A stretch of DNA of 64,000 bases from Phallusia mammillata (lineage: Eukaryota): NCBI GenBank assembly GCA_965637545.1, contig OZ281496.1:2480001-2544000 (forward strand), read 5' to 3'. The position numbers were made by a program, and so were the translations under genes. Numbering within the stretch: the first letter of the stretch is position 1; each line of letters begins with the position of its first letter. The notes beneath the pieces are model-generated. The model had not been told where the DNA came from. It searched no databases and saw only the letters and a program-made list of their open reading frames with translations. This document shows, in pieces, positions 46,611 to 59,769 of the stretch.

Positions 46611-48856
46611 GCTGTCTCTATCCGTTTAAACAAGGCAAATTTGTGCATAAATGTTTTTGAAAAAGGAGAAAGTGAGTTCTGCGTATTGACTGCAATTTTG
46701 GTAAATTCAATTAAGCAAACGTCGCCAAGTACTTGAAGAAAATACATGGGCGGACAGACAATGAGGTAATAACAATTAAAAAAGTTGACATTTCTGCGGA
46801 CAAAAAATTAGCCCATATGCAGGCAGGGTTATTGGAAAACTGCATTTTTTAAACAAAACACTCGTGGCATATAAATAGTGGACCTCGTGGTGGTACATGC
46901 ATATAGAATTTATCGCATGACTGCTCATTTGTATGTGAAGAGGAAAAAAAATTGCAATCGCTACAAGTACAATACGCCATGTTTTTGTGCAACAAACAAC
47001 ATAAGGTTAACGCGTTGTTGGACATTAAATATACAACACAAAACTATACAAAATTGTACATTTTAGAAAGTTTCTAACAATGCAAACGCAGATTGCCTGC
47101 ATTAGGCGTTTGAAACGGTTTTATACTTTTCAAGGACAAACAACAGTCGCTTTACACCATATTTTGCCATCGCAAATTTCAGACGTAACGTTGTTTTTTG
47201 TTTTGTTTCTAGAGGTTGTTTATAGTTGCCAGGCAGTGGGTTATATCCTTTGGTGTAGTGAATATCCTTTGGTGTACTGAAATTGACAGTTCTCCGCTCT
47301 TGAGCACAATAGTGGTTAAAATCACGTCGCTTCTAAAATCACAAGCAGAATAAAGAAATAATAATGACATATTTTACTATTTTTTTTCTGCGACTAGCAG
47401 CAATACCAAATGCAGTTTGGACAAACAATCTTTTTTATGATTTTTTTAATGTGCTTCAATAGTACCTAATATTGTGGTGGAGCAGCGTCTTAAGTGCCTG
47501 GGGATCGAACTGTTTTACAATTTGGGCATACAACCAATTCCGCACTTAAAGGGATAGTTTCGGCTAGCTATTACTGACAAACATTTTACAAGAAATTAAT
47601 ATGTTCGATAAAAACAGAACACGAATAAAGTTTTATTTAAAATACGTAAATATAGTTTGCATGTATTTAAGATGGAATAAAGGGTCGTATAATAATGTTC
47701 ATTATTCATTTCCTCGAAAATAATAAAATACGCATATCGAGTCATGCTCGGAATCTTTGACATGCTTCGCTTGTTCCCTTATTTGGGCGGCTTTAAAGAC
47801 TGCCTAGTTAGCGTACGATGCTATGTAGCAGCACTGTTGGCATAAACAATATATTCCTACATGGTTTAGCTTGGGAAAATCACCAACACGATTGTGTACT
47901 TGTATAGTTAAACTACGTGATACTTAGGCCAGGCGCGGTCTACAATGTCGAAAACCTGTATAGAATACTTTGTGGACATGGCCGTTACATGCGGAGCCAT
48001 GTAAAGATTTACTTTCGTGGAACCAAAAACTAGAAAGGTGGCTTTCTAATATACTTCCATTTTTTTTATTCTTATATCCTACATACCAATTTACTATGCA
48101 CATCATTTGATCCACACATATGATTGTTTTTGCAACCAAAAACTAATGGGTCCGCACACGCGTGTTTGTGCAGACTTATGATTGACAAATGTTCCGGTTA
48201 TTTTTAGATTCTCAGGGACAAATTATCAGAAAGCATTAACCCGACTTTACAAAAGTTTTATCCGTATTCTTTTTGGATCATTATTGACATATAATTAAAA
48301 AAAAACAGTAAAAAAGAAACGGAAAAAAATTAAATTAAATCTCTTGCTTTGATCTTGATATTGTCGTCCAAGGTCAGTTTTTAAACACAAATCTTCCTAT
48401 AAAGCCTTAACACTGGTATTACAGACACTATAAATTAAAAAGCTATTTGCTACAAAAGGTATACAGCATAACAAAATGTTTTTCACTTAACTTTGTTACA
48501 CAAAACGAATACCATTGACTTGTAGTAACCTCTCACGGTTCAGACGCCGAACGACCGTTTAATGACCCTTTCGCACCGTTTTCAATAGCACGCAGTCCTT
48601 AATATTTAACAATATCGTTTTCCCTTTTTTATACATGACTTAAGTATTGATTCTTGAATTGGTTTGTCAAAAATAAAGAAGCAACGTTGTGACGAAAAAT
48701 CGTTCTTAACTGTGCGGCCAAGCTGACAACGAAAATTTAAAGACCATTTATCGCGGCTTTCGAAAAAGTCGGTCTTTATTTTTGCACGTTGTGACGTGCT
48801 TGCGTTTTATTGTTTTTTTCCTTTGTTTATCGTGCACTGTACTAGTCGAATTCAGT

Positions 48857-48910: not shown

Positions 48911-49272
48911 AATACATTTGCCAGAAGAGCTCTTTGAACTTGATACTATGCCTGGCAGCAATAGCTTATTTATCAACTTTGATATTATGCCGTTAACTAA
49001 AAATTATTCTATATGTATGAGTATAAAAGCAATCTTAACTGTTAACAAGGTCGAATGGCATTGTTGACCAGCGATTGATTCATGGTCGCGTCTTTTCGTG
49101 CTGATTTTGCCCAAGTAGTTAAAATTTGATATATTGTCCTGGTATGTGTTAATTTGCTCTAAATCCCCAAAGCTTTATTAGAAGTGAAATACTAAGACTT
49201 GTTTATCTAGTTTAAGTTATGATATTTGAAAATGCAAAAGTTTCGGGAATCTTGTACCTTTTAGGAGATGTT

Positions 49273-52200
49273 TTACTCGTCGTGCTGCTCGTGCGAATCC
49301 ATTCTCCGACGTTTGGCAGCTGGGCCGCAATATTCTGACGGCTCCGAGTCTTCACACTAAATTAAACATGGGTTGTAGATAGTTCATATTAACCAAGATA
49401 GAAATGAAACGTTTTGTTTATGCAATGCTAGTGTTAATATGCAATAGACATGGCTCTAAACCTAGAGTGCCAAACACAGGGGTCGGAATGGTCAATACAT
49501 GGGGTGATAAGCCTGTCATGGGGTCGCTGAGGTGTAGTCATGGAATGGCTGTACGAAACACTCTAACTTGGGGTATGATAACCATATTTCAAAGAGGTGT
49601 AAAAATGCGATTGCACCGGGCCTCCAAACAATCAGTACGCACGAATAAACTTGCAGGGCATTTAAGCAAATTTCATGAAAATAATAATAAAATGTTGAAC
49701 CACTGAAATCAGTAAATTGTTACCCAACTTGATGACAAATGTCATGGTTTTGCCAACTTTATCTGGTGATTGCAAAATGGGGTTTAGCAAAAAAATACAA
49801 AAAACTTACTCTTAAAATTTCAAATATGTTTGCGCCACTGCTATAGTTTCTGGTACTGAGCTCAAAATTAAAGCTTGTGAACCTCCTACAACAGTGGTGT
49901 TCAATCTTTTTCACCATACGACCTATTTTAGGAACCCGATGTAACTGACGACACCCAAACATTTTCATCGTTTTTGTCGCAATAAGTAAAATAAAATTTG
50001 AATGTAGGCAAAAATAGTGGTCTGAGTTCTCGCAGCTTTGTTAACCGTACAGTGACAAGTAACAAAGTATTTAAAATCATCATTTTTGATGTCGTCCTGT
50101 TATAATAGGCCGGAATTTGAATATCGAGACATAAAAAAGTTAAGGACTTTTTATTGCATATAAATGTTTTACTTTCGGGTCGCAACCCACAGGTTGAAAA
50201 CCATTGTTTTAGCGATGTTTTAATCGCAACGACAAAAGTTACTTGTAGAACAAGTTTATCTACCTGAGGAGTTTGACTGGTGGAAAGCACACCTGTAACA
50301 TATAAAACTTATGAATTAGTAACATATAAGGGGGACAGATATTCAGAGGTCATTTCAAATCTAACTTACGTTTGGTGGTATCAACGTTCCCTTGAGATCC
50401 TACTATTGATCCTCCGTCAACTATTGCCCCTTCCATGTGAACGTTCTGCTCTTGTTTTCCTTTATTGACTGTGTTTAAATGGCGTTTCAGTTTATTGCTA
50501 ATTTATAAAGTATTTTTTTCTTGCTATAAGCTTTTTTGCTAGTGAACAGTGTTTGTATTTGGTGTGTACATCTTTTCATAAAACTGATGAAATGACATAG
50601 AATTGTTGTCGTAAACTAATCCTAACTTTACTAACACAAGTTTCTGAAACGTTATTTTACCCCAATGAAACTAACAGCTTACTGGTTATAGATACTGCTG
50701 CAACATCTGCTTTTTGTAACTTTTTAGCAAAGGGATTCATAAAAAAAGTTCCTTCATCTCCTTTTCCATAAACAGTTGATTTTCCGTCAGTTGATTTGAT
50801 TAAAATTTTGAATTTGTCGTCTGTCTCTTCACGGTTATTTTGGTAAATTCCTATTTGAAATTCAAAGAGTGGTTTTGTACAAATTTCATATATGTCCAGT
50901 GTCGTTGGATCAGTGTCAAACCCGACAGGGCTCAAAATTTCGAATGATGCCCTTTCCGAACTGAAATAAAAATTGAAAAACTAACAACCCTGCCTCGTAT
51001 TGTGCATCGTATTTTATACCTAATTTTAAATGATCCTTGGTGTACTTCTTTTCTTAGGTAGTCAGAATTTAATAAATGAACAGCAGGAAAGTCGCATATA
51101 GAAACATATAACAACCGCTTTTTTGATTCCTCGGAAATAGACTCGTGGTCAAGCTTACATTTTAGAATTTTAGTTTTCGCCCAAAAATAATCCTTTATTT
51201 TTTCTAAAACATACCTGTAAAAAAATAATTTCATTAAAAAAATGCCAGGACGTTTACAACGACCGATTCTTGCCAGGTAAAATGAGTTGTATTGAACTTG
51301 TGTTTGAAATCACCATTGTAAAAAACGGTTTCAATGTCCTTCCATTTCAAACCATCAACACTTTTTTTTATCTGAAGTGTGACAACAAAGTTAAAAATTA
51401 ACAGTTAAACCAAAAAATTAAAAATTAAATTTAAATGATACCACAATCTGTTGTCGAACTTCCGAAACGTAGCATGTTGGTAAAGTGATAGAAATATCTC
51501 TTTTGAATTTTAAATGATTAGGTTCGCATTTAAGCATTGGAGTCAATTGGTCCTAAGCGAAATTAGAGGTGGTTAACTTTAGTTTACTGACACAAATTTT
51601 GTTTACCGTTTTGCTACGTCTTCCGTAACATGAAGTGAGTTTGATTGTGGTCGGTTGACTCAAAGCATTTTGTGGAATATCAACAATACATCCTCCAACC
51701 GTAAGTGTTGCTCCCTCGGATCCAACAATTAACGACTTAGTTTCAAAAAACTCGTAGTCGTCCTAACAAAACACAGCATTTTTTACAATATGCTTTTAGC
51801 TTGGTACACATTTATTGAATGAATAATAGTGTTCTGGATAAAACGTGGTGCTAACTAATTATAGCGCATTAAACATTTTTTATGGAAATAGCAAACTAGA
51901 AACAAAATCAAGCACACAACGGTCCTTAAAAACAGAAAGTTAAAAAAAACTTACCCGGTGTTTCAGCAACTCCAGTTTTGGTTTAATAATTTTCATCACA
52001 TCAGCAGGCAAGTTGCCAGATTTTTCATAATTTTGGCGATCTTCTATATTGTACAAACAAGTCGCAATGTGCTCACCACCTTCGTTGCCAAACAAATTTT
52101 CTCCCACATCAAAATATCTCATCTAGCAAGACAAGTAGATAAGAAACGTGTTTGGAACAGGACATAGCCGAATTACACATATACGAGTAACATTCAAACA

Positions 52201-55200
52201 AGTTATATTGTAGTATTTTCTGACTGAAAGCGATTGATAAAAAATAATGATACAGAAAGTTTACTATTAAAGCCAAGTTAATGGACGTACCTAAACTTTA
52301 CGCAACAAAGCAATTGTGCATATTAAATAGTTGAATCCCGAGAGCTAAAATTGAGTTTAACAGAGTTGAAACTCAATATAAATTTGACAACTTACTAAAA
52401 CCTACGTGAAACCAAACCAAAAAGCCGAGTACGATTTGCACTTTTTGCGTACCGGGTATGGCCTTTTGTAGATGGCTGATGACAATTTGATTATCCCACT
52501 ATCAGTTATGAAACAGTTTTGGAGACAAAGTTCATCAATGTTGTGTATGCAAGATGCTAAATATTTTGCTCCGTCATCTTTTACTTGATTCCACTCGAGC
52601 GATAATCTTTCCATCTGAAAAGTCAATGTCCAAAAATGTTAACCTTTATATGTAAATTATGTTGGTGTTTTCAGTAAATATCAAAACAAAACGAATATTC
52701 AAAGTACAAGAAATTTGAAACAAACTAAATCGTAAACGACAAAAAAATCGTTTTATAGCTTTCCCGATAAACGAAGTGCGTTGAAAAGTAATATTATTAT
52801 AGTTGACTATTTGGTGACATATTTAAAAAATATTTAGGGTTTTCGGAGAAGAATTTTAACTTTTAGGCGTATTTGTGGGGGAAAATCATGTTTCTGGATG
52901 AAGGTACAATATTTTGCTATGAATAACAAAAGCTTTAAAGTTGAATTTTTGAAAAAAAGAATTCAGCAGTGAAAAGGTTAAAACCAGCCCTGCAGAAAGC
53001 ACTCTAATTGAAACTGTTTAAATAATCGGCAAACTTCCGAAGCAACCGAAATTCTTAAATTTTATCAATTGAAGAAATTTGGTTTCATCACTGCTTGTTT
53101 TATCGCACTGCAAGTTTCAAAAAACAGTACGACTAAACAACGAGCGAATTTAAACCAAATACACTTACCCACCCTATAACAATGGATTCAACTGAGTCAT
53201 ATCGCTCCATGGTTTAGGCCAGTGGTTCCCAAACTATGCGCCGCGGCACACTGGTGTGCCGCGAGATGTCATTAGGTGTGCCGCAAAAAATATGGAAATT
53301 AAAATCAATCAAGTAGAGTAGCAGTACCAGGTGCTTAGACCACTAGGCCAACATGCTCCACGTCTCTGAGATGTTCAACTAGGCTATTTAACTATGAGAG
53401 TGACCTGTATAGCGGCTTTATGACTTTATAGTCAGTGCCTTTGTCAACATATGTTTTATTCAAATGTTCGAAGTGCGCCAAATATTTTTTGTTTTTTCTA
53501 AAATGCGCCTTAAAAGAAAAAAGTTTGGGAACCACTGGTTTAGGCCAACACGGTTAATAATAATAAACAGAGTTGCCCTATGACGAGGAAAACGGACATT
53601 TTGGAACGAAAACCAAAAATGTGCGAAACCGGTTAATCGTAGTTGATTTATAAGGTATTTTGGTGCTTTGTTTTCCGTGACCTTAAAATTAATGTAAACA
53701 CCAAATATCAGAAATACTTTTATGCAGCAGACGGCCATTTGAGGACAAATAAAAAATAGTTAAAATGACATGCTACACATCCGAAAAATGACTGTGTCAT
53801 ACCTTTTGCTTTGGGCGGTTATGAGCAACAGTTAAGTCCAAATTTACAATTTTTAAGCGTTGTTTGACAAACAAAAAACGCTTAGTAAATTTTCGTCCGA
53901 TGACCACCAAAGAACACAACAACCAATGAGATTCACACTAAAATTCAAAGCTTTTCGTATTAAACAAGGCGACTAGTGGTCTGCATGTTAGGTTCATTGC
54001 GTGATGAGAGCGATCTTACGTCGTCAAATGCGTGATACGATATTTCGATAGTGCCACACCGATTTTTTTTTATAAGAAGCATCCTTCTAGGTATTGTGTT
54101 TGTAGCTAATCTTTCCTGTGTGAATTTGAGACAATTTATGTTCTTGGTCCAAGCTAGTTCATTTGGATTTAGATCAAGAAGCGCGATGCATTTACAAACA
54201 AAGTTTACAAAATTACCGGCTTGGTCCGATCGCTGATGGCTGATGACAGGGCTTTGGTGCCCCTGCTCGTGATTCCACAATCCCGAAGTCCAAGTCGGTC
54301 AATAAAATGGATGCAAGTAGCTAAGACTTTCGCTCCACCATCTCTAATCGGATTGCGCGCCAGCTCCAATTTGTCCATCTATGGGGCAATTGTATGTTAA
54401 CGGCTTTATTAATGAAACAATTATTAGAATATAAGCTTATATGTTTATATTTAAACAAGCACCCGATTACGCGAGTTTCTCAGTTTACATCTATACCTTG
54501 CTCTCTGTAGTCAAATTTATGACAAATCTCCCGAATAATGCAACAATTCATATTAGTCACCACCCCCTCATCCCGGAACACAGAATTTTAGAAAAAAGAA
54601 TTCAGCAGTGAACGGGTTATAACCAACCCTGCAGGGAGCACTCTAATTGAAACTGTTTAAATAATCAGAAACTTCCGAAGCAACCAAAAACTCTTAAATT
54701 TTATCAATTGAAGACATTTGATTTTATCACTGCTTGTTTTATCGCACTGCAAGTTTCAGACAAAGTACGACTAAACAACGAGCGAATTTAAACCAAATAC
54801 ACGTACCAGAGGGGTGACTAATATGAACTGTAGCATTACGTTATAGTGTTACAACTTTAGATGGTTTTCAACTTTCGTGTAATTCTTAGCAAGGGGGCAT
54901 GTAGTCATAGACATAAACTTATATATTTGTAATATCACTGAAGTTTAAACGATTTTATAATATGCTTTAAGGTTTTGTAATAAAACTTGATATGATAGTG
55001 TAGTTCTTTGAGAATGGGATGAATCGTAGAAAATTTAAATCATTTGTATACACGTTGAAAACCAACGCCTACCGAGTTTGTCCGTTTGCTGATGGCTGAT
55101 GCCAACGCTTTAATACCACTGCTAGTAATTCCACAACGTTCAAGGTCAAGTTTTTTAATGTTATGTACGCAAGTTGCCAACTCTTTCGCTCCATCATCCT

Positions 55201-58200
55201 CGATAGGATTGAAACAAAGGGACAACTTCTTAATCTGTAAATCATTTCATAGTTACGTATTAGAGATTGTTGTCTTATTGAAGTTATACACTTAATTTCT
55301 TAAAATGCAGCAAATTCACTGATCAGTAAAAATATTGACTACCACAGCAGGATTGATGTAAGATATTAGAAATTATTTTTGTCAAAATCGTTTGGCCTGT
55401 GAACAAAAAGTCCCCACCTAAGTAAACTTAAATATATCAAAGTCACAGATTGAAACTTAAGTAGAGGGGAAGTAATAAATTCTTAGGATTTTGTACCTGG
55501 GAAACCCATCGTTTTAAAAATCGTTTGCGGGTCACCACTTGTGTGAAACCTTGCGAATTACTGTAATGAGCGCAACAAAGCTAACGGGTCGTACAGTGTG
55601 TAAACAGCAGTTTGTACCCTGTACCGTATCGTCTATATACAGAACACGGGAAATAATTTTGCTCTTTCCGTCAATGAGATTTGATAAAAGATAATTTATT
55701 GTTGGACGTTTGGTCAGATCAAATCCTCCCTTCTATAAGTCAACAACGCCAAACTGTCGTATAAAAGTCGACCGACAAGCGTTTTTTTTTTACGGACCAG
55801 AGCTGTTGTTCCGCCATGTAAAAATATCCATAGGTGTGTTTTACTGTGTTCATTTCATCATACGCAGCAACTTTCGATTTTACACTAACGTGGGAGAGGA
55901 CAAATATTTGTTTTTACTGGAACTCCACTCCAGGGCCGCTACAATCAACACGGTCGCTTATCTGGGGGAAATGAGTATCTATAAATCTTTTACCGACGTT
56001 GGACCTCGTAACTTATTTCGGGTTTCTGTTGATTACAAGCAGAACGGTTGAATTTGGTGTAAAAAGTTGTGTGATCGGGGAGCTCGTGCGTTATGATGAA
56101 TTGACCAATTGACCGACTTTTTTACCATTGTCACAGAGAAATGACGATATGCAAATTGTTCATTACGTTGTACTAGGTTATGTCGCTGGGAGTGACTTGG
56201 ACACTGAGAGCGGGGCTTTGGGGTAAAGTTTTGTGTTTGCGTATAGTTTTGTTATTGTTGGACATGCTTTTTTTGTTAGGTACAAAACCTTGACGAGATA
56301 GGCAAAATGGATAGTACATAATAAATATATCAAGTGTCATGGTTGCGGGACTTGCGTTTGTGGTCACAGTTGTCATTTTTAACAAGCAGCCGTTTTTCCA
56401 CTGGACTTGACCGGAAGTTTCTTATCCTAAGCATGTGGGCAAACATACAATTGACCGGGTAAAATATTTGGAACGTTAGATTCCTCTTCGATGAATTAAA
56501 CACCGCGAAATGTGATTGCCCGCCACTGTTTTGTACAGTTCGTGCGACTCAGCCGTGGCATAGCTGTTTGAGCAGTTTGTAATAAAACTGCAAGGACTAC
56601 CATTGTAATACAGTGTTTTGTCAGCAAAAGTCAGTTTGCCGAAAATATAACATTTGGGGTTTATCACTATTGACTGCAATGTGTCCAAGTTCTCATTTGA
56701 CTCTTTGAAACTTGACTACGGGTTGATTAAAAAGTTATCACTTGGACGAATCAAAATCAGCGATGATAAAGAAGCTTTACCCTATTTAATTTGTAAAATA
56801 GCTGGTAGTAAAATTAAAAAGATTTCATAAACGTGTTATTAACTAAGACAGTTTGCGAATTTATTGATATAGTATTAAAAACTTTTTCAATTTAAATATG
56901 CTTGCTTGTTGGCAAAAGAATAAGCACGATTACCCAGCTTTGGTCAAATGAACAAATGAAAAAAAGTCAAATTTTTTAATACGTTAGGTATCTAGTGCGA
57001 AACACGATTCTTACTGGATTCGGTCGCTTGCTGATCGCCGAGGACAATGCAACAATGCTTTCGCTAGTGATGTCACAATCCCAAAACAAGAGCTGATCAA
57101 TATTATGTATACAGTTAGCAAATGCTTCTACATCGTGGCATTGAAGTGAACTGCTGTTGAACAATATTTTTTGTATCTGTAAAGCAATGATATAATTTGA
57201 ACTTACTACTTGTTACAGAAACAATAAAAACACCTGAACATAAGTGACTGGTCAGCAGTAAAGTTTACGAACGAGTTTCAGCGTCTTCATTTTAAATTGC
57301 TGTGATCAAAAATCATAAAGCACGATTTTTGGTAAATTTTAGATTTTTGAATAGAACGTGTTGTCAACTAGAAAGGTGGCGATCCTATATAGTTCCAGAA
57401 ACAATCTACAAACATAAAAAACCGAAAACACATGTGTTCATGCGAATTAGTTGCGGTAAAAAAATGGTGCAAATATTAACCCAAAGTTATAACAGTTTTG
57501 TCCACTTTCGTTTTACTACATTATATTGTCAAATATTTAGGTAAGTAGTTAAAAAAAAAAAGTTCTTCCAATACTCTTGGAATTTTACTCTGTAGCTTTG
57601 ATCTCAATTTAGCTGTCTAGAACCAGTTATGTTAAAATTTCCTAAAAAAACATTTTTCACTTTAATGTTATTCAACAACGTTTTGTCTGACATTTATCGA
57701 GTTCAAATCAAGCCTAAAGTATGAAACCTTCGCCAAAACTAAAAACGCACATGCTAACCAAATAAAACCATATAGCATTGCTGCGCAAAAACAGCTGATT
57801 TCAATCATCAAAAAGACTGTCTAGTAAAACGTCTGTTTGAGTTTGAAGCACAGGTCTACCAAGGGAATCACTCTCATGTGATTTGTGTGCTCTGGGGCGT
57901 GAAGGTTTAGCGAACCTTTTTTTTTTTTTGTGCAAATATTGGGGCTGTAAGGGTAACCAACTGGTCCGAACAAGCTAAATTTTTAACACGAAACGCACTA
58001 CAAACAAATGGTCAGCGTTTCAGCACATTAGGAGTTCTGTTTTCCTGAAGCACTGGTAAACCTAAAAACAAATACTTGAGAATAAAGGGGTAAAAATAGA
58101 TAAATTCAACAAATTTTGAGTGGAGCACTTTGGGTGAATAACTAACAGGTGTGTGAAGTTTTGTTTATAGTTGTTTGGTATCGGTTTAGTTCTACTTGCT

Positions 58201-59769
58201 TACTGGTTTGTTTAGGTTTGAGATTCCTTCAGCAAGATGTTGAATGTCTTCAGTTTTGATTTTACAGTGGCGAAATTCCAAACTGTTTACTTTATGCAGA
58301 CAGTTGACGAAGATGTTTAGTGATCCTCGGGGCTACATAAAGTCATAAAAACATACAGAATTATATAGCTTGTGCTTCGCGTACTACTAATTTGTCGTAT
58401 CGTCGCAATTCATATGCACAATATCGTATCAAAAGCGAAACAAACTTAACTCAACAATTTTGATAGCCGCAGCCTAAACAATGGTGTCGCATTTGAAAAA
58501 AATCGTCCAAACTAAGTATTATTTGGTTAACAAACATATTTTCCTTTACAACGCGCCGATAAGCTAAAGCAAAACTGTAAAAATCACTTTTTAAATTAAA
58601 CTTTACAACAGTTTCTCACTTACCAGTATAGAGAGGTTGAGATATAAATCGTGAGATGTTATCGAGTGACAAATCAAATCCGTCAAACCAGTTACCTCTG
58701 AAGTCGACAAAAACGTTTTTTCGTAGCGACCAGTAGTTGAAAATTTTGGATTAACCCTAATCCGCTTTGGAATTTGATCCGCTATTTTACGAAAAATTGC
58801 TTCATTTTGTGCTTCGTACACTAATGAACACCACGTTTTCAGTTGACAAGCCATGTAAGGTTTATAGGAACTGGACAAAATGGTTGTCAACATTCGACTT
58901 CTTTGCATCCATTGTTTGTCTTTGAATAGTTCATAAAATTGTGATTGAATATTAGGATTGAGAAAACCAAACATATGGCGATCGACAGGCAAAGTTTTCA
59001 AAGGAAACTGTTTTACTAAACTGTTTAATTGTTGATTTGACATAAAAACAGCAGCATAAATAGCTGCAAAGTAAAGTTTCCAAACATCATGTGTAAATTC
59101 ATTGCTACAATCCAACAACTCAAATTGAAAGCTGGCTGCCTTGTCATGAAATGTCGATGAAAACATTGACAAATTTTTATACGATTTATCAGATGTAAGC
59201 GACTTTTGAGTTTGATTCCATGCTAAGCGTGCTAGCCCTTCCAAGTTTAAATCTTGATTTTTAAGTTGTTCAGATTTAATAAGCATCGAAAACATTGTTG
59301 TCAATATTTCCGTTTCTGTTTTAAAATCTCTTTTCGGATTTTTGAAAACTACGTAGATGATTATTCTTCGCACGTACTCGTCATCACACGCTTCAAGTAA
59401 AACTCTGCGTTGTTCTAAATACTTGTAAACTTTTTCCCAGTTTTGACCGCATATCTCTTTGCAAACGTCTAGAAGGAGAAATACAAGCTAACTATGTCTG
59501 TGTATGATATGCTCTATACGCTTCGTTTGGCCTAAGCGTTTGTAAAATTGATTTTGTCACATTCTACGTTAGTTATATGAAATGACCATTCGGTATTCAA
59601 TACAAAGTTGTAGCATTAACATGGCGGTTGCGGATCAATTTACACAAACGATTGCCAATTATGTTGCAACTGCATTACAGCTTGTTGATATATTAAACAA
59701 ACTTACGTTCAATGTAATAAAATCTGAGAAAATCAGACGATGTCGGGGCCTGCAAATTCAAAACACAAT
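49273..59769 (-). CDS. NLR-like protein: degenerate NACHT-associated region, LRRs, ZU5-UPA, C-terminal Gly-rich motif
   Basis: Phase-consistent exons: 59769-59707, 59468-58624, 58332-58204, 57176-57015, 55234-55073, 54378-54217, 52614-52453, 52122-51955, 51762-51607, 51552-51442, 51371-51274 (GC donor), 51214-51020, 50960-50683, 50468-50370, 50292-50264, 49356-49273. No internal stops found. Probable further 5' exons up to ATG 61303. Confidence 0.8.
49440..49700 (+). mobile_element. SINE-like 3' fragment
   Basis: GC-richer block ending in an AATAATAATAA tail; similar SINE-like scraps at 47475, 53330 (minus-strand A-box TGGCCTAGTGG) and 63770. Confidence 0.3.
49892..50206. mobile_element. Degenerate hAT MITE (GGGTCGC.ACCC family)
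   Basis: CAGTGGTGTTCAA / TTGAAAACCATTG ends; no clear TSD. Confidence 0.6.
53220..53537. mobile_element. hAT MITE (TGCCGCG family)
   Basis: TIR CAGTGGTTCCCAAAC; exact TSD GTTTAGGC. Confidence 0.95.
54546..54832. mobile_element. TIR MITE; its internal ~210 bp recurs at 52960-53170
   Basis: TTCATATTAGTCACC..CCCC / GGGGTGACTAATATGAA ends; ~90% direct repeat of 54590-54810 at 52960-53170. Confidence 0.7.

What the first reader, a model, noticed from the sequence alone, without database searches (positions are those of the whole stretch)
49273..59769. NLRP1-like sensor: pseudo-NACHT, LRR, ZU5-UPA and an amyloid-like tail with no CARD/DD
Seen: 16 exons splice in phase without stops. They give a winged-helix remnant (FTHDVWKLYFAA, compare the NACHT motif FxHxxxQEFxAA), six RNI-type LRR exons, a ZU5 (IVGSEGATLTVGGCIVDIPQNALSQPTTIKL...TPMLKCEPNHLKFKRDISITLP), a UPA-like region, a Gly-rich motif and a PAAKRRR tail. 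The ORF track misses the ZU5 exons entirely. Known: NACHT-LRR-ZU5-UPA(FIIND)-CARD is the vertebrate NLRP1 layout, where the self-cleaved C-terminal fragment is released and polymerises. Inference: this may be an independently assembled invertebrate-chordate 'functional degradation' immune sensor with a different effector end.
Basis: partly seen in the sequence, partly recalled or inferred. Interest (0 to 1): 0.9.

Follow-up and report, generated by a model that had tools for sequence, protein, structure and literature searches.

The report
NACHT-less NLR-LRR gene with ZU5 self-cleavage module
A sea-squirt-type (tunicate) genome carries an expressed, selection-maintained gene built from the rear half of an NLR immune sensor (no ATPase), leucine-rich repeats and a PIDD/NLRP1-type ZU5 self-cleavage module, and it ends in a short conserved tail instead of a CARD or death domain.

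Summary
The exon chain is real. Fifteen minus-strand exons (59468-49273) join in phase with AG/GT sites (one GC donor) into 946 codons without a stop. Spliced RNA contigs confirm eight junctions exactly: LRR2>3>4>5>6 and UPAb>tail1>tail2>tail3, plus a 3'UTR intron. No contig covers the decisive LRR6>ZU5a junction or the 5' end.

Domains:
- The large exon folds confidently as NLR HD1-WHD-HD2. All top PDB matches are NLRs. No Walker A/B ATPase core lies within 20 kb, and C5 relatives start with Met at this very boundary.
- LRR_6 and ZU5 (24 bits against a cut-off of 21) pass Pfam.
- The motif TTHF|TW is invariant in six paralogs on three chromosomes.
- The 'UPA' fold is unproven: no Pfam, PDB or fold support.
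- There is no CARD or death domain. The tail lacks the RHIM core, but its short G/S/Q/N motif recurs in five of the family members held. The gene ends in PAAKRRR, which resembles a c-Myc-type nuclear signal.

Ka/Ks against a recent, broken duplicate is 0.41.

A same-strand NACHT(+P-loop)-LRR-ZU5 locus on C5 suggests that this subfamily derives from a full NLRP1-like layout.

This scan has already described NACHT-less LRR-ZU5 and ZU5-UPA families with such tails on other DNA of this genome.

Verdict: a new variant of a known kind. The mechanism is inferred.

The parts
58624..59468 (-). Large exon. It encodes the post-ATPase part of a NACHT module (HD1, winged helix with FTHDVWKLYFAA, HD2) and the first LRR unit. 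It begins in phase 1 after an AG acceptor.
   Evidence: The exon aligns to residues about 250-650 of NACHT proteins, just past the Pfam NACHT match. The AF2 model has pLDDT 85 and pTM 0.87. The top 50 Foldseek PDB hits are all NLRs, with E from 3e-5 and TMq about 0.6.
58204..58332 (-). LRR exon 1
   Evidence: AG/GT sites in phase. Conserved in paralog p100 at 61%.
57015..57176 (-). LRR exon 2
   Evidence: Its 3' end is spelled by the loose end of an RNA contig at 55234.
55073..55234 (-). LRR exon 3 (RNI type)
   Evidence: Pfam LRR_6 at 31.7 bits, above the 23.4 cut-off. An RNA contig covers exactly 55073-55234, and its loose ends spell LRR2 and LRR4.
54217..54378 (-). LRR exon 4
   Evidence: Pfam LRR_6 at 21.9 bits. 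RNA joint 52614>54217 in runs X1 and X10.
52453..52614 (-). LRR exon 5
   Evidence: Pfam LRR_6 at 25.5 bits. RNA joints 52614>54217 and 52122>52453.
51955..52122 (-). LRR exon 6, the C-terminal cap. It always lies directly upstream of the ZU5a exon in paralogs.
   Evidence: RNA joint 52122>52453. Paralog collinearity.
51607..51762 (-). ZU5 exon a
   Evidence: Window 51466-51735 matches Pfam ZU5 positions 2-83 at 24 bits, above the 21 cut-off, read through the in-frame 54-nt intron. The exon has 49 genome matches. The top ESM Atlas hits are ZU5, ZU5 and CARD8 FIIND.
51442..51552 (-). ZU5 exon b
   Evidence: Pfam ZU5 positions 56-82, E 0.0034, for the exon alone.
51274..51371 (-). ZU5 exon c, ending in ...NTTHF|TW. 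His is at 51284-51282, Phe at 51281-51279 and Thr at 51278-51276. The donor is GC.
   Evidence: TTHFT(W) is invariant in the window gene, the C3 duplicate, p125, p127, the C2 locus and the C5 locus. A C1 relative has TNHFS.
51020..51214 (-). First exon of the post-cleavage, UPA-like region
   Evidence: In phase. Conserved at 35-90% in six paralogs. No Pfam or Atlas hit.
50683..50960 (-). Second exon of the UPA-like region. It is beta-rich and ends in the conserved FFMNPF.
   Evidence: Conserved in seven family members. An RNA loose end at 50468 spells its last 13 bases. The AF2 model reached only pLDDT 60 and found no significant fold match.
50370..50468 (-). Tail exon 1, with the conserved motif ...AIVDGGSIVGSQGNVDTTK
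   Evidence: RNA joints on both sides. Related motifs lie after the UPA-like region in the duplicate, p125, the C2 locus and the C5 locus, and nowhere else in 694,000 six-frame residues held. Ten genome matches.
50264..50292 (-). Tail exon 2 (29 nt)
   Evidence: RNA joints 50292>50370 and 49356>50264.
49273..49356 (-). Tail exon 3: acidic stretch, PAAKRRR (49323-49303) and stop codon TAA at 49276-49274. The exon runs on as 3'UTR to 49258.
   Evidence: RNA contig 49258-49356. KRRR is kept in the duplicate.
47214..47332 (-). 3'UTR exon, reached by a 1.9-kb intron from the donor at 49258. The lower bound is approximate.
   Evidence: The 119-letter loose end of the X1 contig maps to 47303-47332, next to an AG acceptor.

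Best explanation
What it is. This is a functional, expressed member of a lineage-specific tunicate gene family. The encoded protein consists of:
- the HD1-winged helix-HD2 part of an NLR, without the nucleotide-binding domain;
- about 11 RNI-type leucine-rich repeats;
- a ZU5 domain ending in an invariant HF|T site;
- a beta-rich region of about 160 residues where UPA normally sits;
- a tail of about 70 residues with a conserved G/S/Q/N motif and a basic PAAKRRR end, and no death-fold domain.

Likely mechanism (inferred). The ZU5 module cleaves itself at HF|T, with Thr as the nucleophile, as PIDD1 does at HF|S and NLRP1/CARD8 do at SF|S. The two fragments stay associated non-covalently. Ligand binding to, or destruction of, the LRR/helical N-terminal part then frees the C-terminal fragment. 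That fragment signals through its short tail, by self-association or partner binding via the conserved motif, or by nuclear import via the basic end.

Origin. The subfamily probably derives from a full NACHT-LRR-ZU5 ancestor by loss of the ATPase core.

Shown: exon structure, splicing of most junctions, purifying selection, the NLR-helical fold, LRR, ZU5, motif conservation, absence of an ATPase core nearby, and absence of CARD or death domain.

Inferred: self-cleavage, the UPA fold, release of the fragment, and the signalling output.
For: Gene structure and expression:
- Gene model with canonical sites and no stops.
- Eight splice junctions seen in RNA contigs, all at the predicted bases.
- Ka/Ks 0.41 overall against a 91%-identical duplicate: 0.63 for ZU5, 0.45 for the UPA-like region, 0.32 for the tail. 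Exons are 88-96% identical, while aligned blocks that include introns are 75-87%.

NLR-derived N-terminal part:
- AF2 and Foldseek show an NLR HD1-WHD-HD2 fold.
- Alignments to NACHT proteins begin exactly where Pfam NACHT ends.
- No ATPase core by tblastn across window positions 45001-80000 or the paralog regions, at E up to 5.
- C5 relatives open with Met at the HD1 boundary, directly after an in-frame stop.

LRR and ZU5:
- LRR_6 is above its cut-off.
- ZU5 scores 24 bits against a cut-off of 21 at window 51466-51735.
- HF|T or HF|S is conserved across the family.
- Ser, Thr or Cys can serve as nucleophile in this class of autoproteolysis, and PIDD cleaves at HF/S directly after its ZU5 domains (PMC3210808).

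Family context:
- The LRR6-ZU5a-b-c-UPA order is conserved at C3 12.54, 12.74, 10.10 and 17.09 Mb and at C2 2.2 Mb.
- At C5 19.43 Mb a 612-aa NACHT ORF with a P-loop (Pfam NACHT 68 bits), LRR exons, ZU5, a UPA-like region and the tail motif lie on one strand.
Against: - No RNA contig spans LRR6>ZU5a or the ZU5a-UPAa exons, so the fusion of the sensor half to the ZU5 half rests on phase, the lack of a start codon and paralog collinearity.
- The first coding exon and its ATG are not identified.
- The UPA assignment is positional only. Pfam UPA and FIIND gave nothing. A PDB profile search gave nothing. The AF2 model of exon UPAb was poor, and rat NLRP1 FIIND appeared only at rank 20 with E 6.8.
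- Thr instead of Ser at the cleavage site has not been shown to work in a ZU5 domain.
- No biochemical data exist.
- The closest copy of the gene (C3 17.1 Mb) is broken by a frameshift and stops, so family members are decaying.
Confidence: 0.7

Rival explanations
1. These are two adjacent genes rather than one. An ATPase-less NLR-remnant/LRR gene would end after LRR6. A separate ZU5-UPA-tail gene would follow, kept in tandem in the paralogs.
For: No RNA contig bridges 51955 to 51762. Reading through the LRR6 donor reaches a stop after 4 codons, so a short isoform is possible. ZU5 modules in this genome are combined with several other N-terminal parts, for example a TPR-like ORF fused to ZU5a in one exon.
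Against: ZU5a starts directly at an AG acceptor preceded by an in-frame stop. It has no ATG before the ZU5 core, and the first Met lies in exon b. LRR6 ends and ZU5a starts in phase 0, with strong sites and only a 192-nt intron. The LRR6-type cap exon lies immediately upstream of ZU5a in five further loci on two chromosomes. Both halves are present in the same RNA run at similar contig depth, 5.2-8.9 against 5.8.
Confidence: 0.1
2. The gene is a decaying or non-functional NLR fragment: a transcribed pseudogene left after 5' truncation of a NACHT-LRR-ZU5 gene, with no signalling role.
For: The ATPase core is lost. The start codon is not identified. At least two close copies are broken: C3 17.1 Mb has a frameshift and stops, and C3 14.0 Mb has stops. 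RNA contig depth is low. No close homolog appears among 1.84 billion representative proteins; the best is 26% identical at E 3e-7.
Against: There are 946 codons over 15 exons without a stop, and all splice sites are intact. Ka/Ks is 0.41, and indels in the duplicate's ZU5 and UPA exons come in multiples of three. The ATPase-less layout is shared by diverged paralogs (about 50% identity on C3, about 30% on C5) that keep open frames, some with their own Met at the boundary. The truncation is therefore old and has been maintained.
Confidence: 0.12
3. It is an amyloid-signalling sensor. After release, the UPA-tail fragment would template a RHIM- or fungal-type amyloid through the G/S/Q/N motif and pass the fold to effector proteins carrying the same motif.
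For: The motif sits exactly where CARD or the death domain sits in NLRP1 and PIDD. It is conserved between paralogs that are only 30-50% identical elsewhere (SIVGSQGNVD, SIVGTQGKID, ITGSNVGVE/D). Similar exons occur at seven further loci, some not next to detectable ZU5 exons. Tail Ka/Ks is 0.32.
Against: The RHIM core tetrad [IV]Q[IVLC]G is absent. There is only one short copy and no repeat. No amyloid predictor or experiment was available. Two earlier follow-ups in this scan, on sister families of this genome, found the RHIM likeness no better than chance. The extra loci could not be fetched, so no effector partner is known.
Confidence: 0.08

Closest known systems
NLRP1 (vertebrate PYD-NACHT-LRR-FIIND[ZU5-UPA]-CARD inflammasome sensor)
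   Same: Both have NLR-type HD1-WHD-HD2 followed by RNI-type LRRs and then a ZU5 whose last residues form an xF|S/T self-cleavage motif. The predicted fold of the large exon matches human NLRP1 (7wge) among other NLRs. A probable full NACHT-LRR-ZU5 relative exists in the same genome.
   Different: This gene has no nucleotide-binding domain, no PYD and no CARD. Its motif is HF|T rather than SF|S. The Pfam FIIND model does not match, whereas the generic ZU5 model does. UPA is unproven. Orthology was not tested.
PIDD1 (LRR-ZU5-ZU5-UPA-death domain)
   Same: Both have LRRs followed directly by ZU5 with no ATPase in between, and an HF|S-type motif with a conserved His-Phe immediately after the ZU5 (PMC3210808). 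The tail carries a nuclear-signal-like basic stretch; from my own knowledge, the PIDD-C fragment acts in the nucleus.
   Different: This gene has one ZU5 rather than two and Thr rather than Ser. Its LRRs are RNI/NLR-type and are preceded by an NLR helical module. It has no death domain.
CARD8 (disordered N-terminus-FIIND-CARD)
   Same: Both are ATPase-less proteins whose output depends on a ZU5-UPA self-cleavage module. CARD8 is the working model for how an ATPase-less member could still act by N-terminal degradation.
   Different: CARD8 has no LRR or NLR helical part and ends in a CARD.
NACHT-ZU5 architectures of sponges, ctenophores and cnidarians (PMC12909245), and the ZU5-UPA families already noted by this scan in this genome (s1-382229, s1-349151)
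   Same: These are combinations of NLR parts or other sensors with ZU5 outside vertebrates. The sister families in this genome also lack a death-fold end and carry short tails.
   Different: The published examples keep the NACHT ATPase, and their function is unknown. The window gene keeps only the helical half of NACHT. The membrane-anchored family has a different N-terminal part.

Membership tests
NLR (NACHT-LRR) proteins | NACHT nucleotide-binding domain with Walker A (GxxGxGKS/T) and Walker B | tested here: not met
   tblastn with nine NLR ATPase cores against window positions 45001-80000 and four paralog regions found nothing at E<0.3. The exon starts exactly after the ATPase core. C5 relatives begin with Met at that point.
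NLR (NACHT-LRR) proteins | HD1-winged helix-HD2 module following the ATPase core | tested here: met
   The AF2 model has pLDDT 85, and all 50 best PDB matches are NLRs. The conserved F-x-H...W...FAA motif is kept.
NLR (NACHT-LRR) proteins | C-terminal RNI-type leucine-rich repeats | tested here: met
   Pfam LRR_6 at 31.7 and 25.5 bits against a cut-off of 23.4.
FIIND / ZU5-UPA self-cleaving proteins (NLRP1, CARD8, PIDD1, UNC5CL) | ZU5 domain | tested here: met
   Pfam ZU5 positions 2-83 at 24 bits against a cut-off of 21, at window 51466-51735. Exon b alone gives E 0.0034.
FIIND / ZU5-UPA self-cleaving proteins (NLRP1, CARD8, PIDD1, UNC5CL) | [HS]-F|S-type motif at the C-terminal end of ZU5 | tested here: met
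   THF|TW lies about 120 residues after the ZU5 start. It is invariant in six paralogs, and a C1 relative has HF|S. The nucleophile is Thr rather than Ser.
FIIND / ZU5-UPA self-cleaving proteins (NLRP1, CARD8, PIDD1, UNC5CL) | Actual autoproteolysis | not testable with these tools
   This needs expression of the protein and a T-to-A mutant at the HF|T site.
FIIND / ZU5-UPA self-cleaving proteins (NLRP1, CARD8, PIDD1, UNC5CL) | UPA domain after the cleavage site | tested here: inconclusive
   No Pfam UPA or FIIND match. No PDB sequence match. The AF2 model of exon UPAb has pLDDT 60 and is beta-rich, and rat NLRP1 FIIND appears only at rank 20 with E 6.8. The spliced domain could not be submitted to the fold tools.
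FIIND / ZU5-UPA self-cleaving proteins (NLRP1, CARD8, PIDD1, UNC5CL) | C-terminal death-fold effector (CARD or death domain) | tested here: not met
   An RNA contig joins UPAb to tail1, tail2, tail3 and the stop codon. The tail is about 70 residues and has no Pfam hit.
RHIM amyloid motif | Core tetrad [IV]-Q-[IVLC]-G in a stretch of about 18 residues | tested here: not met
   The tail reads ...GGSIVGSQGNVDTT... and contains no such tetrad.

The most novel reading that the evidence does not exclude
The released fragment (UPA-like region plus tail) would signal without any death-fold domain. It would act through the conserved motif of about 12 residues ([ST]-I-[VT]-G-[ST]-[QN]-x-[GNK]-[VI]-[DE]..TT), used as a templating or oligomerisation element that is shared with motif-bearing partner genes at other loci, possibly combined with nuclear import via PAAKRRR. 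That would be a chordate counterpart of the NLR-associated amyloid or short-motif signalling known from fungi and bacteria, sitting on a functional-degradation type sensor that has dispensed with its ATPase.
Probability: 0.1. Interest if true: 0.85.

Novelty: new variant of a known kind. Interest (0 to 1): 0.5.

Why it matters
NLRP1 and CARD8 are the textbook cases of sensing by 'functional degradation', and they are mainly known from vertebrates. A tunicate family would place this design in the sister group of vertebrates. It joins NLR-derived helical and LRR parts to a ZU5 self-cleavage module with an invariant HF|T site. It shows that the design tolerates loss of the ATPase, and it raises the question of what replaces CARD or the death domain as output.

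The family offers natural variants for testing which parts of the module are needed for cleavage and release:
- with and without the NACHT ATPase;
- LRR or TPR-like N-terminal parts;
- HF|T or HF|S cleavage motifs.

The scan has met sister families in this genome before, and NACHT-ZU5 layouts are already published for early animals. This is therefore an extension of a known theme, not a new kind of system.

Tried and rejected
1. Structure or Pfam test of the whole spliced ZU5-UPA region. Exon UPAb alone gave a poor model (pLDDT 60) and no significant fold or PDB match. ESM Atlas gave PLAT-like hits at 0.86 for UPAb and nothing for UPAa. I treat these as uninformative.
2. Pfam FIIND and UPA searches of the whole genome returned nothing anywhere. 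That is probably a sensitivity limit of exon-wise search, not absence.
3. Search of 1.84 billion representative proteins with the large exon found only distant NLRs (26% identity or less, E 3e-7 or weaker; best from Ciona and Clavelina) and no annotated ortholog to borrow a gene model from.
4. The 5' end:
   - tblastx against diverged paralogs shows no conserved upstream exon.
   - Ten upstream minus-strand ORFs have no Pfam hit.
   - A candidate ATG at 59622 with a phase-1 donor at 59603 is not conserved in the duplicate, so I do not assert it.
5. RNA for LRR6>ZU5a: there are no contigs there. This is a gap at low depth, not evidence against the junction.
7. RHIM reading: rejected, because the core tetrad is absent.
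8. Literature searches for FIIND or ZU5 with NLRs in tunicates or amphioxus found no direct precedent. The searches were few and cover open-access papers only.

Full report
**Setting.** The window is G000:C3:2480001-2544000 of a 240-Mb, AT-rich animal genome. The nearest protein matches of the gene's large exon are NLRs of the ascidians Ciona intestinalis and Clavelina lepadiformis. I therefore take the organism to be a tunicate. The feature lies on the minus strand.

**Observation.** I read the open stretches with their flanks and assembled 15 exons by sequence anchors:

| Exon | Coordinates |
|---|---|
| Large exon | 59468-58624 |
| LRR1 | 58332-58204 |
| LRR2 | 57176-57015 |
| LRR3 | 55234-55073 |
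| LRR4 | 54378-54217 |
| LRR5 | 52614-52453 |
| LRR6 | 52122-51955 |
| ZU5a | 51762-51607 |
| ZU5b | 51552-51442 |
| ZU5c | 51371-51274 |
| UPAa | 51214-51020 |
| UPAb | 50960-50683 |
| tail1 | 50468-50370 |
| tail2 | 50292-50264 |
| tail3 | 49356-49273 |

Every acceptor is AG. Every donor is GT except GC after ZU5c. The phases fit, and the joined frame has 946 codons ending at TAA 49276-49274.

The large exon begins with two bases of a split codon after a pyrimidine tract and AG. An upstream exon carrying the ATG must therefore exist. I could not identify it.

**RNA.** One run of the same species (X1, supported by X10) holds contigs that skip exactly my introns:
- 52614>54217
- 52122>52453
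- 50292>50370
- 49356>50264

Each skipped stretch has GT..AG ends on the minus strand. Loose ends spell the end of LRR2 at 55234, the start of LRR4 at 55073, and the last 13 bases of UPAb at 50468.

The same contig continues from a donor at 49258 into a 3'UTR exon at 47332.

The runs are labelled only as 'RNA?', but spliced contigs can only come from RNA. No contig lies on ZU5a to UPAa or on the LRR6>ZU5a junction. The large exon and the 5' end were outside the single 6-kb stretch that I was allowed to lay.

**The 'pseudo-NACHT'.**
- A bona fide NLR of this genome (736-aa ORF with GQAGIGKTT and a DGFDE Walker B) aligns to the large exon only from its residue 399 onward, just after the TSRP motif.
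- In 12 distant NLRs from a 1.84-billion-protein library the match starts at residues 250-450, where their Pfam NACHT match ends.
- With a 20-sequence alignment, AlphaFold gives pLDDT 85 and pTM 0.87.
- All 50 best Foldseek matches in the PDB are NLRs: NLRP2, 3, 7, 9 and 14, cytoplasmic-lattice (CPL) and SCMC complex entries, NOD2, NLRP1 (7wge) and NLRC4. E-values start at 3e-5, with TMq about 0.6.

The exon therefore encodes HD1, the winged helix (with the conserved F-x-H...FAA) and HD2, plus the first LRR.

The ATPase core is absent:
- tblastn with nine ATPase cores finds nothing in 35 kb around the gene or around four paralogs.
- Relatives on C5 (about 30% identity) start their open frame with Met at this same boundary, directly after an in-frame stop.
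- The diverged C3 paralogs start their conservation at the same residue.

The ATPase-less state is thus old and shared. It is not an assembly accident.

**LRR and ZU5.** Three LRR exons pass or approach the Pfam LRR_6 cut-off. ZU5 exon b alone matches Pfam ZU5 positions 56-82 at E 0.0034. Exons a and b, read through their in-frame 54-nt intron, match positions 2-83 at 24 bits against a cut-off of 21, at window 51466-51735. Language-model look-alikes of exon a are ZU5, ZU5 and CARD8 FIIND, which I take as a lead only.

**The cleavage motif.** About 120 residues after the start of ZU5 the protein reads NTTHF|TW. The exon boundary (GC donor) falls two residues later. TTHFT(W) is invariant in the window gene, its duplicate, two C3 paralogs and the C2 and C5 relatives. 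A C1 relative has TNHFS. PIDD cleaves itself at HF/S directly after its ZU5 domains, and NLRP1 and CARD8 cleave at SF/S. This reaction class uses Ser, Thr or Cys as the nucleophile (PMC3210808). The motif is therefore of the PIDD type, with Thr in place of Ser.

**The 'UPA' region.** The 160 residues after the site are conserved in seven family members, with an invariant ...F(F/S)(M/K)NPF end. They match no Pfam model and no PDB sequence. I could only fold the 92-residue exon UPAb. The model was beta-rich but poor (pLDDT 60). The rat NLRP1 FIIND fragment appeared only at rank 20 with E 6.8. I call the UPA fold unproven. The spliced domain could not be handed to the structure tools because it has no reference.

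**The end of the protein.** RNA shows that UPAb is followed only by three short exons and the stop codon. There is no CARD or death domain, and none is found by Pfam.

Tail exon 1 carries ...AIVDGGSIVGSQGNVDTTK. Related motifs follow the UPA-like region in the duplicate, in p125 (SIVGTQGKIDTT), at the C2 locus (TITGSNVGVDKITTTK) and at the C5 locus (NITGSNVGVEKITTTK). They occur nowhere else in 694,000 six-frame residues that I held. Seven further loci match this exon, but I could not fetch them.

The motif has no RHIM tetrad. Two earlier follow-ups of this scan, on sister families in the same genome, also found the RHIM likeness no better than chance.

The last exon holds PAAKRRRMD, kept as PAVKRRRTD in the duplicate. 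From my own knowledge it resembles the c-Myc nuclear localisation signal PAAKRVKLD.

**One gene or two.** The LRR6>ZU5a joint is not seen in RNA. Several points favour one gene:
- Both exon ends are in phase 0, with strong sites and a 192-nt intron.
- ZU5a has no start codon and follows an in-frame stop.
- The distinctive LRR cap exon sits directly upstream of ZU5a at five further loci on C3 and C2.
- Both halves are in the same RNA run at similar depth.

I put two separate genes at about 0.1.

**Selection and copies.** A segmental duplicate at C3 17.075-17.108 Mb is collinear over exons and introns. Exons are 88-96% identical, while aligned blocks that include introns are 75-87%. Ka/Ks is 0.41 overall, 0.63 for ZU5, 0.45 for the UPA-like region and 0.32 for the tail. 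The indels in the duplicate's ZU5 and UPA exons come in threes. That duplicate has a frameshift and stops in its large exon. A third copy at C3 14.0 Mb also has stops. The window gene is the intact member of this young group.

**Family context.** ZU5a-like exons occur at 49 or more places in the genome.
- At C5 19.432-19.449 Mb, one strand carries a 612-aa ORF with a full NACHT (Pfam 68 bits, GIAGVGKTT), LRR exons, ZU5a-c with TTHFTW, a UPA-like region and the tail motif. If these are spliced together, it is a complete NLRP1-like layout and the likely ancestral state.
- At C1 35.9 Mb a TPR-like helical ORF runs into ZU5a within one exon.

NACHT-ZU5 layouts are reported for sponges, ctenophores and cnidarians with unknown function (PMC12909245). 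ZU5/FIIND fusions in marine invertebrates are discussed in PMC8195603. I found no paper on such genes in tunicates, but my searches were few.

**Mechanism (inferred).** By analogy with PIDD1, NLRP1 and CARD8, the protein cleaves itself at HF|T, and the N-terminal part (helical module, LRR and ZU5) holds the C-terminal fragment. Without an ATPase, nucleotide-driven oligomerisation is unlikely. Activation would have to come from ligand binding to, or destruction of, the N-terminal part, as in CARD8. The output would come from the conserved tail motif, from nuclear import, or from both. None of this is tested.

**Verdict.** This is a new variant of a known kind: an ATPase-less NLR-LRR-ZU5 protein with a non-death-fold tail. 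It belongs to a family that this scan has already met elsewhere in this genome.

Noticed in passing
window 53215-53537 (inside the LRR4-LRR5 intron): RNA contigs of all four runs lie here at much higher depth (10-28) than on the gene's exons. They carry several differences and run on into unlike sequence on both sides, in records up to 1383 nt. This is probably a dispersed repeat or transposon fragment transcribed elsewhere.
   Followed up: no
G000:C5:19432001-19449000 (L040+L034), plus strand: A 612-aa ORF with a complete NACHT (P-loop GIAGVGKTT, Pfam 68 bits) is followed on the same strand by LRR exons, ZU5a-c (TTHFTW), a UPA-like region and the tail motif. This is a candidate full NACHT-LRR-ZU5 gene. 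Its splicing was not checked, and a 7-kb repeat-rich gap lies before the ZU5 exons.
   Followed up: partly
L030:4319-5260 (G000:C1:35947319-35948260), plus strand: A single 314-aa open frame joins a TPR-like helical region (Pfam TPR_1, E 1.6e-4) directly to a ZU5a-type sequence. The ZU5 module is therefore also fused to non-LRR sensor-like repeats in this genome.
   Followed up: partly
G000:C3:17075001-17108000 (L038, L035, L023, L028): A collinear segmental duplicate of the whole gene, with exons 88-96% identical. It has a frameshift and stops in the large exon but in-frame indels in the ZU5 and UPA exons. It is probably a recently inactivated copy, unless the frameshift is an assembly error.
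   Followed up: yes
G000:C3:13999925-14007393 (L013): A third close copy, 87-89% identical over the end of the large exon and the first LRR exons and 64-69% in the other fragments matched, with TGA and TAA stops in several exons.
   Followed up: partly
G000:C6:20728042, 24476553, 24559224, 25824051; C5:21901051, 21951599, 21995966: Further matches (38-60% identity) to the 32-residue tail-motif exon. Two lie in open frames of 150-156 aa, and one lies inside an NLR cluster on C6. They could not be fetched, so it is unknown whether they are tails of more ZU5 genes or partner proteins.
   Followed up: no
L019 (window coordinates 64145-65224, just beyond the window end): A coding-like stretch of about 1 kb is 42-58% identical at protein level to a stretch inside an intron of the C3 17.1-Mb duplicate. 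It is not collinear with the gene and is probably a transposable element.
   Followed up: no
G000:C5:17171784-17222350 (L015-L017): Three nearly identical ATPase-less relatives open with Met (MADKNERQELF...) at the HD1 boundary. UPAb-like exons lie 3-4 kb downstream of two of them. This looks like a compact tandem or inverted cluster of the same architecture.
   Followed up: partly
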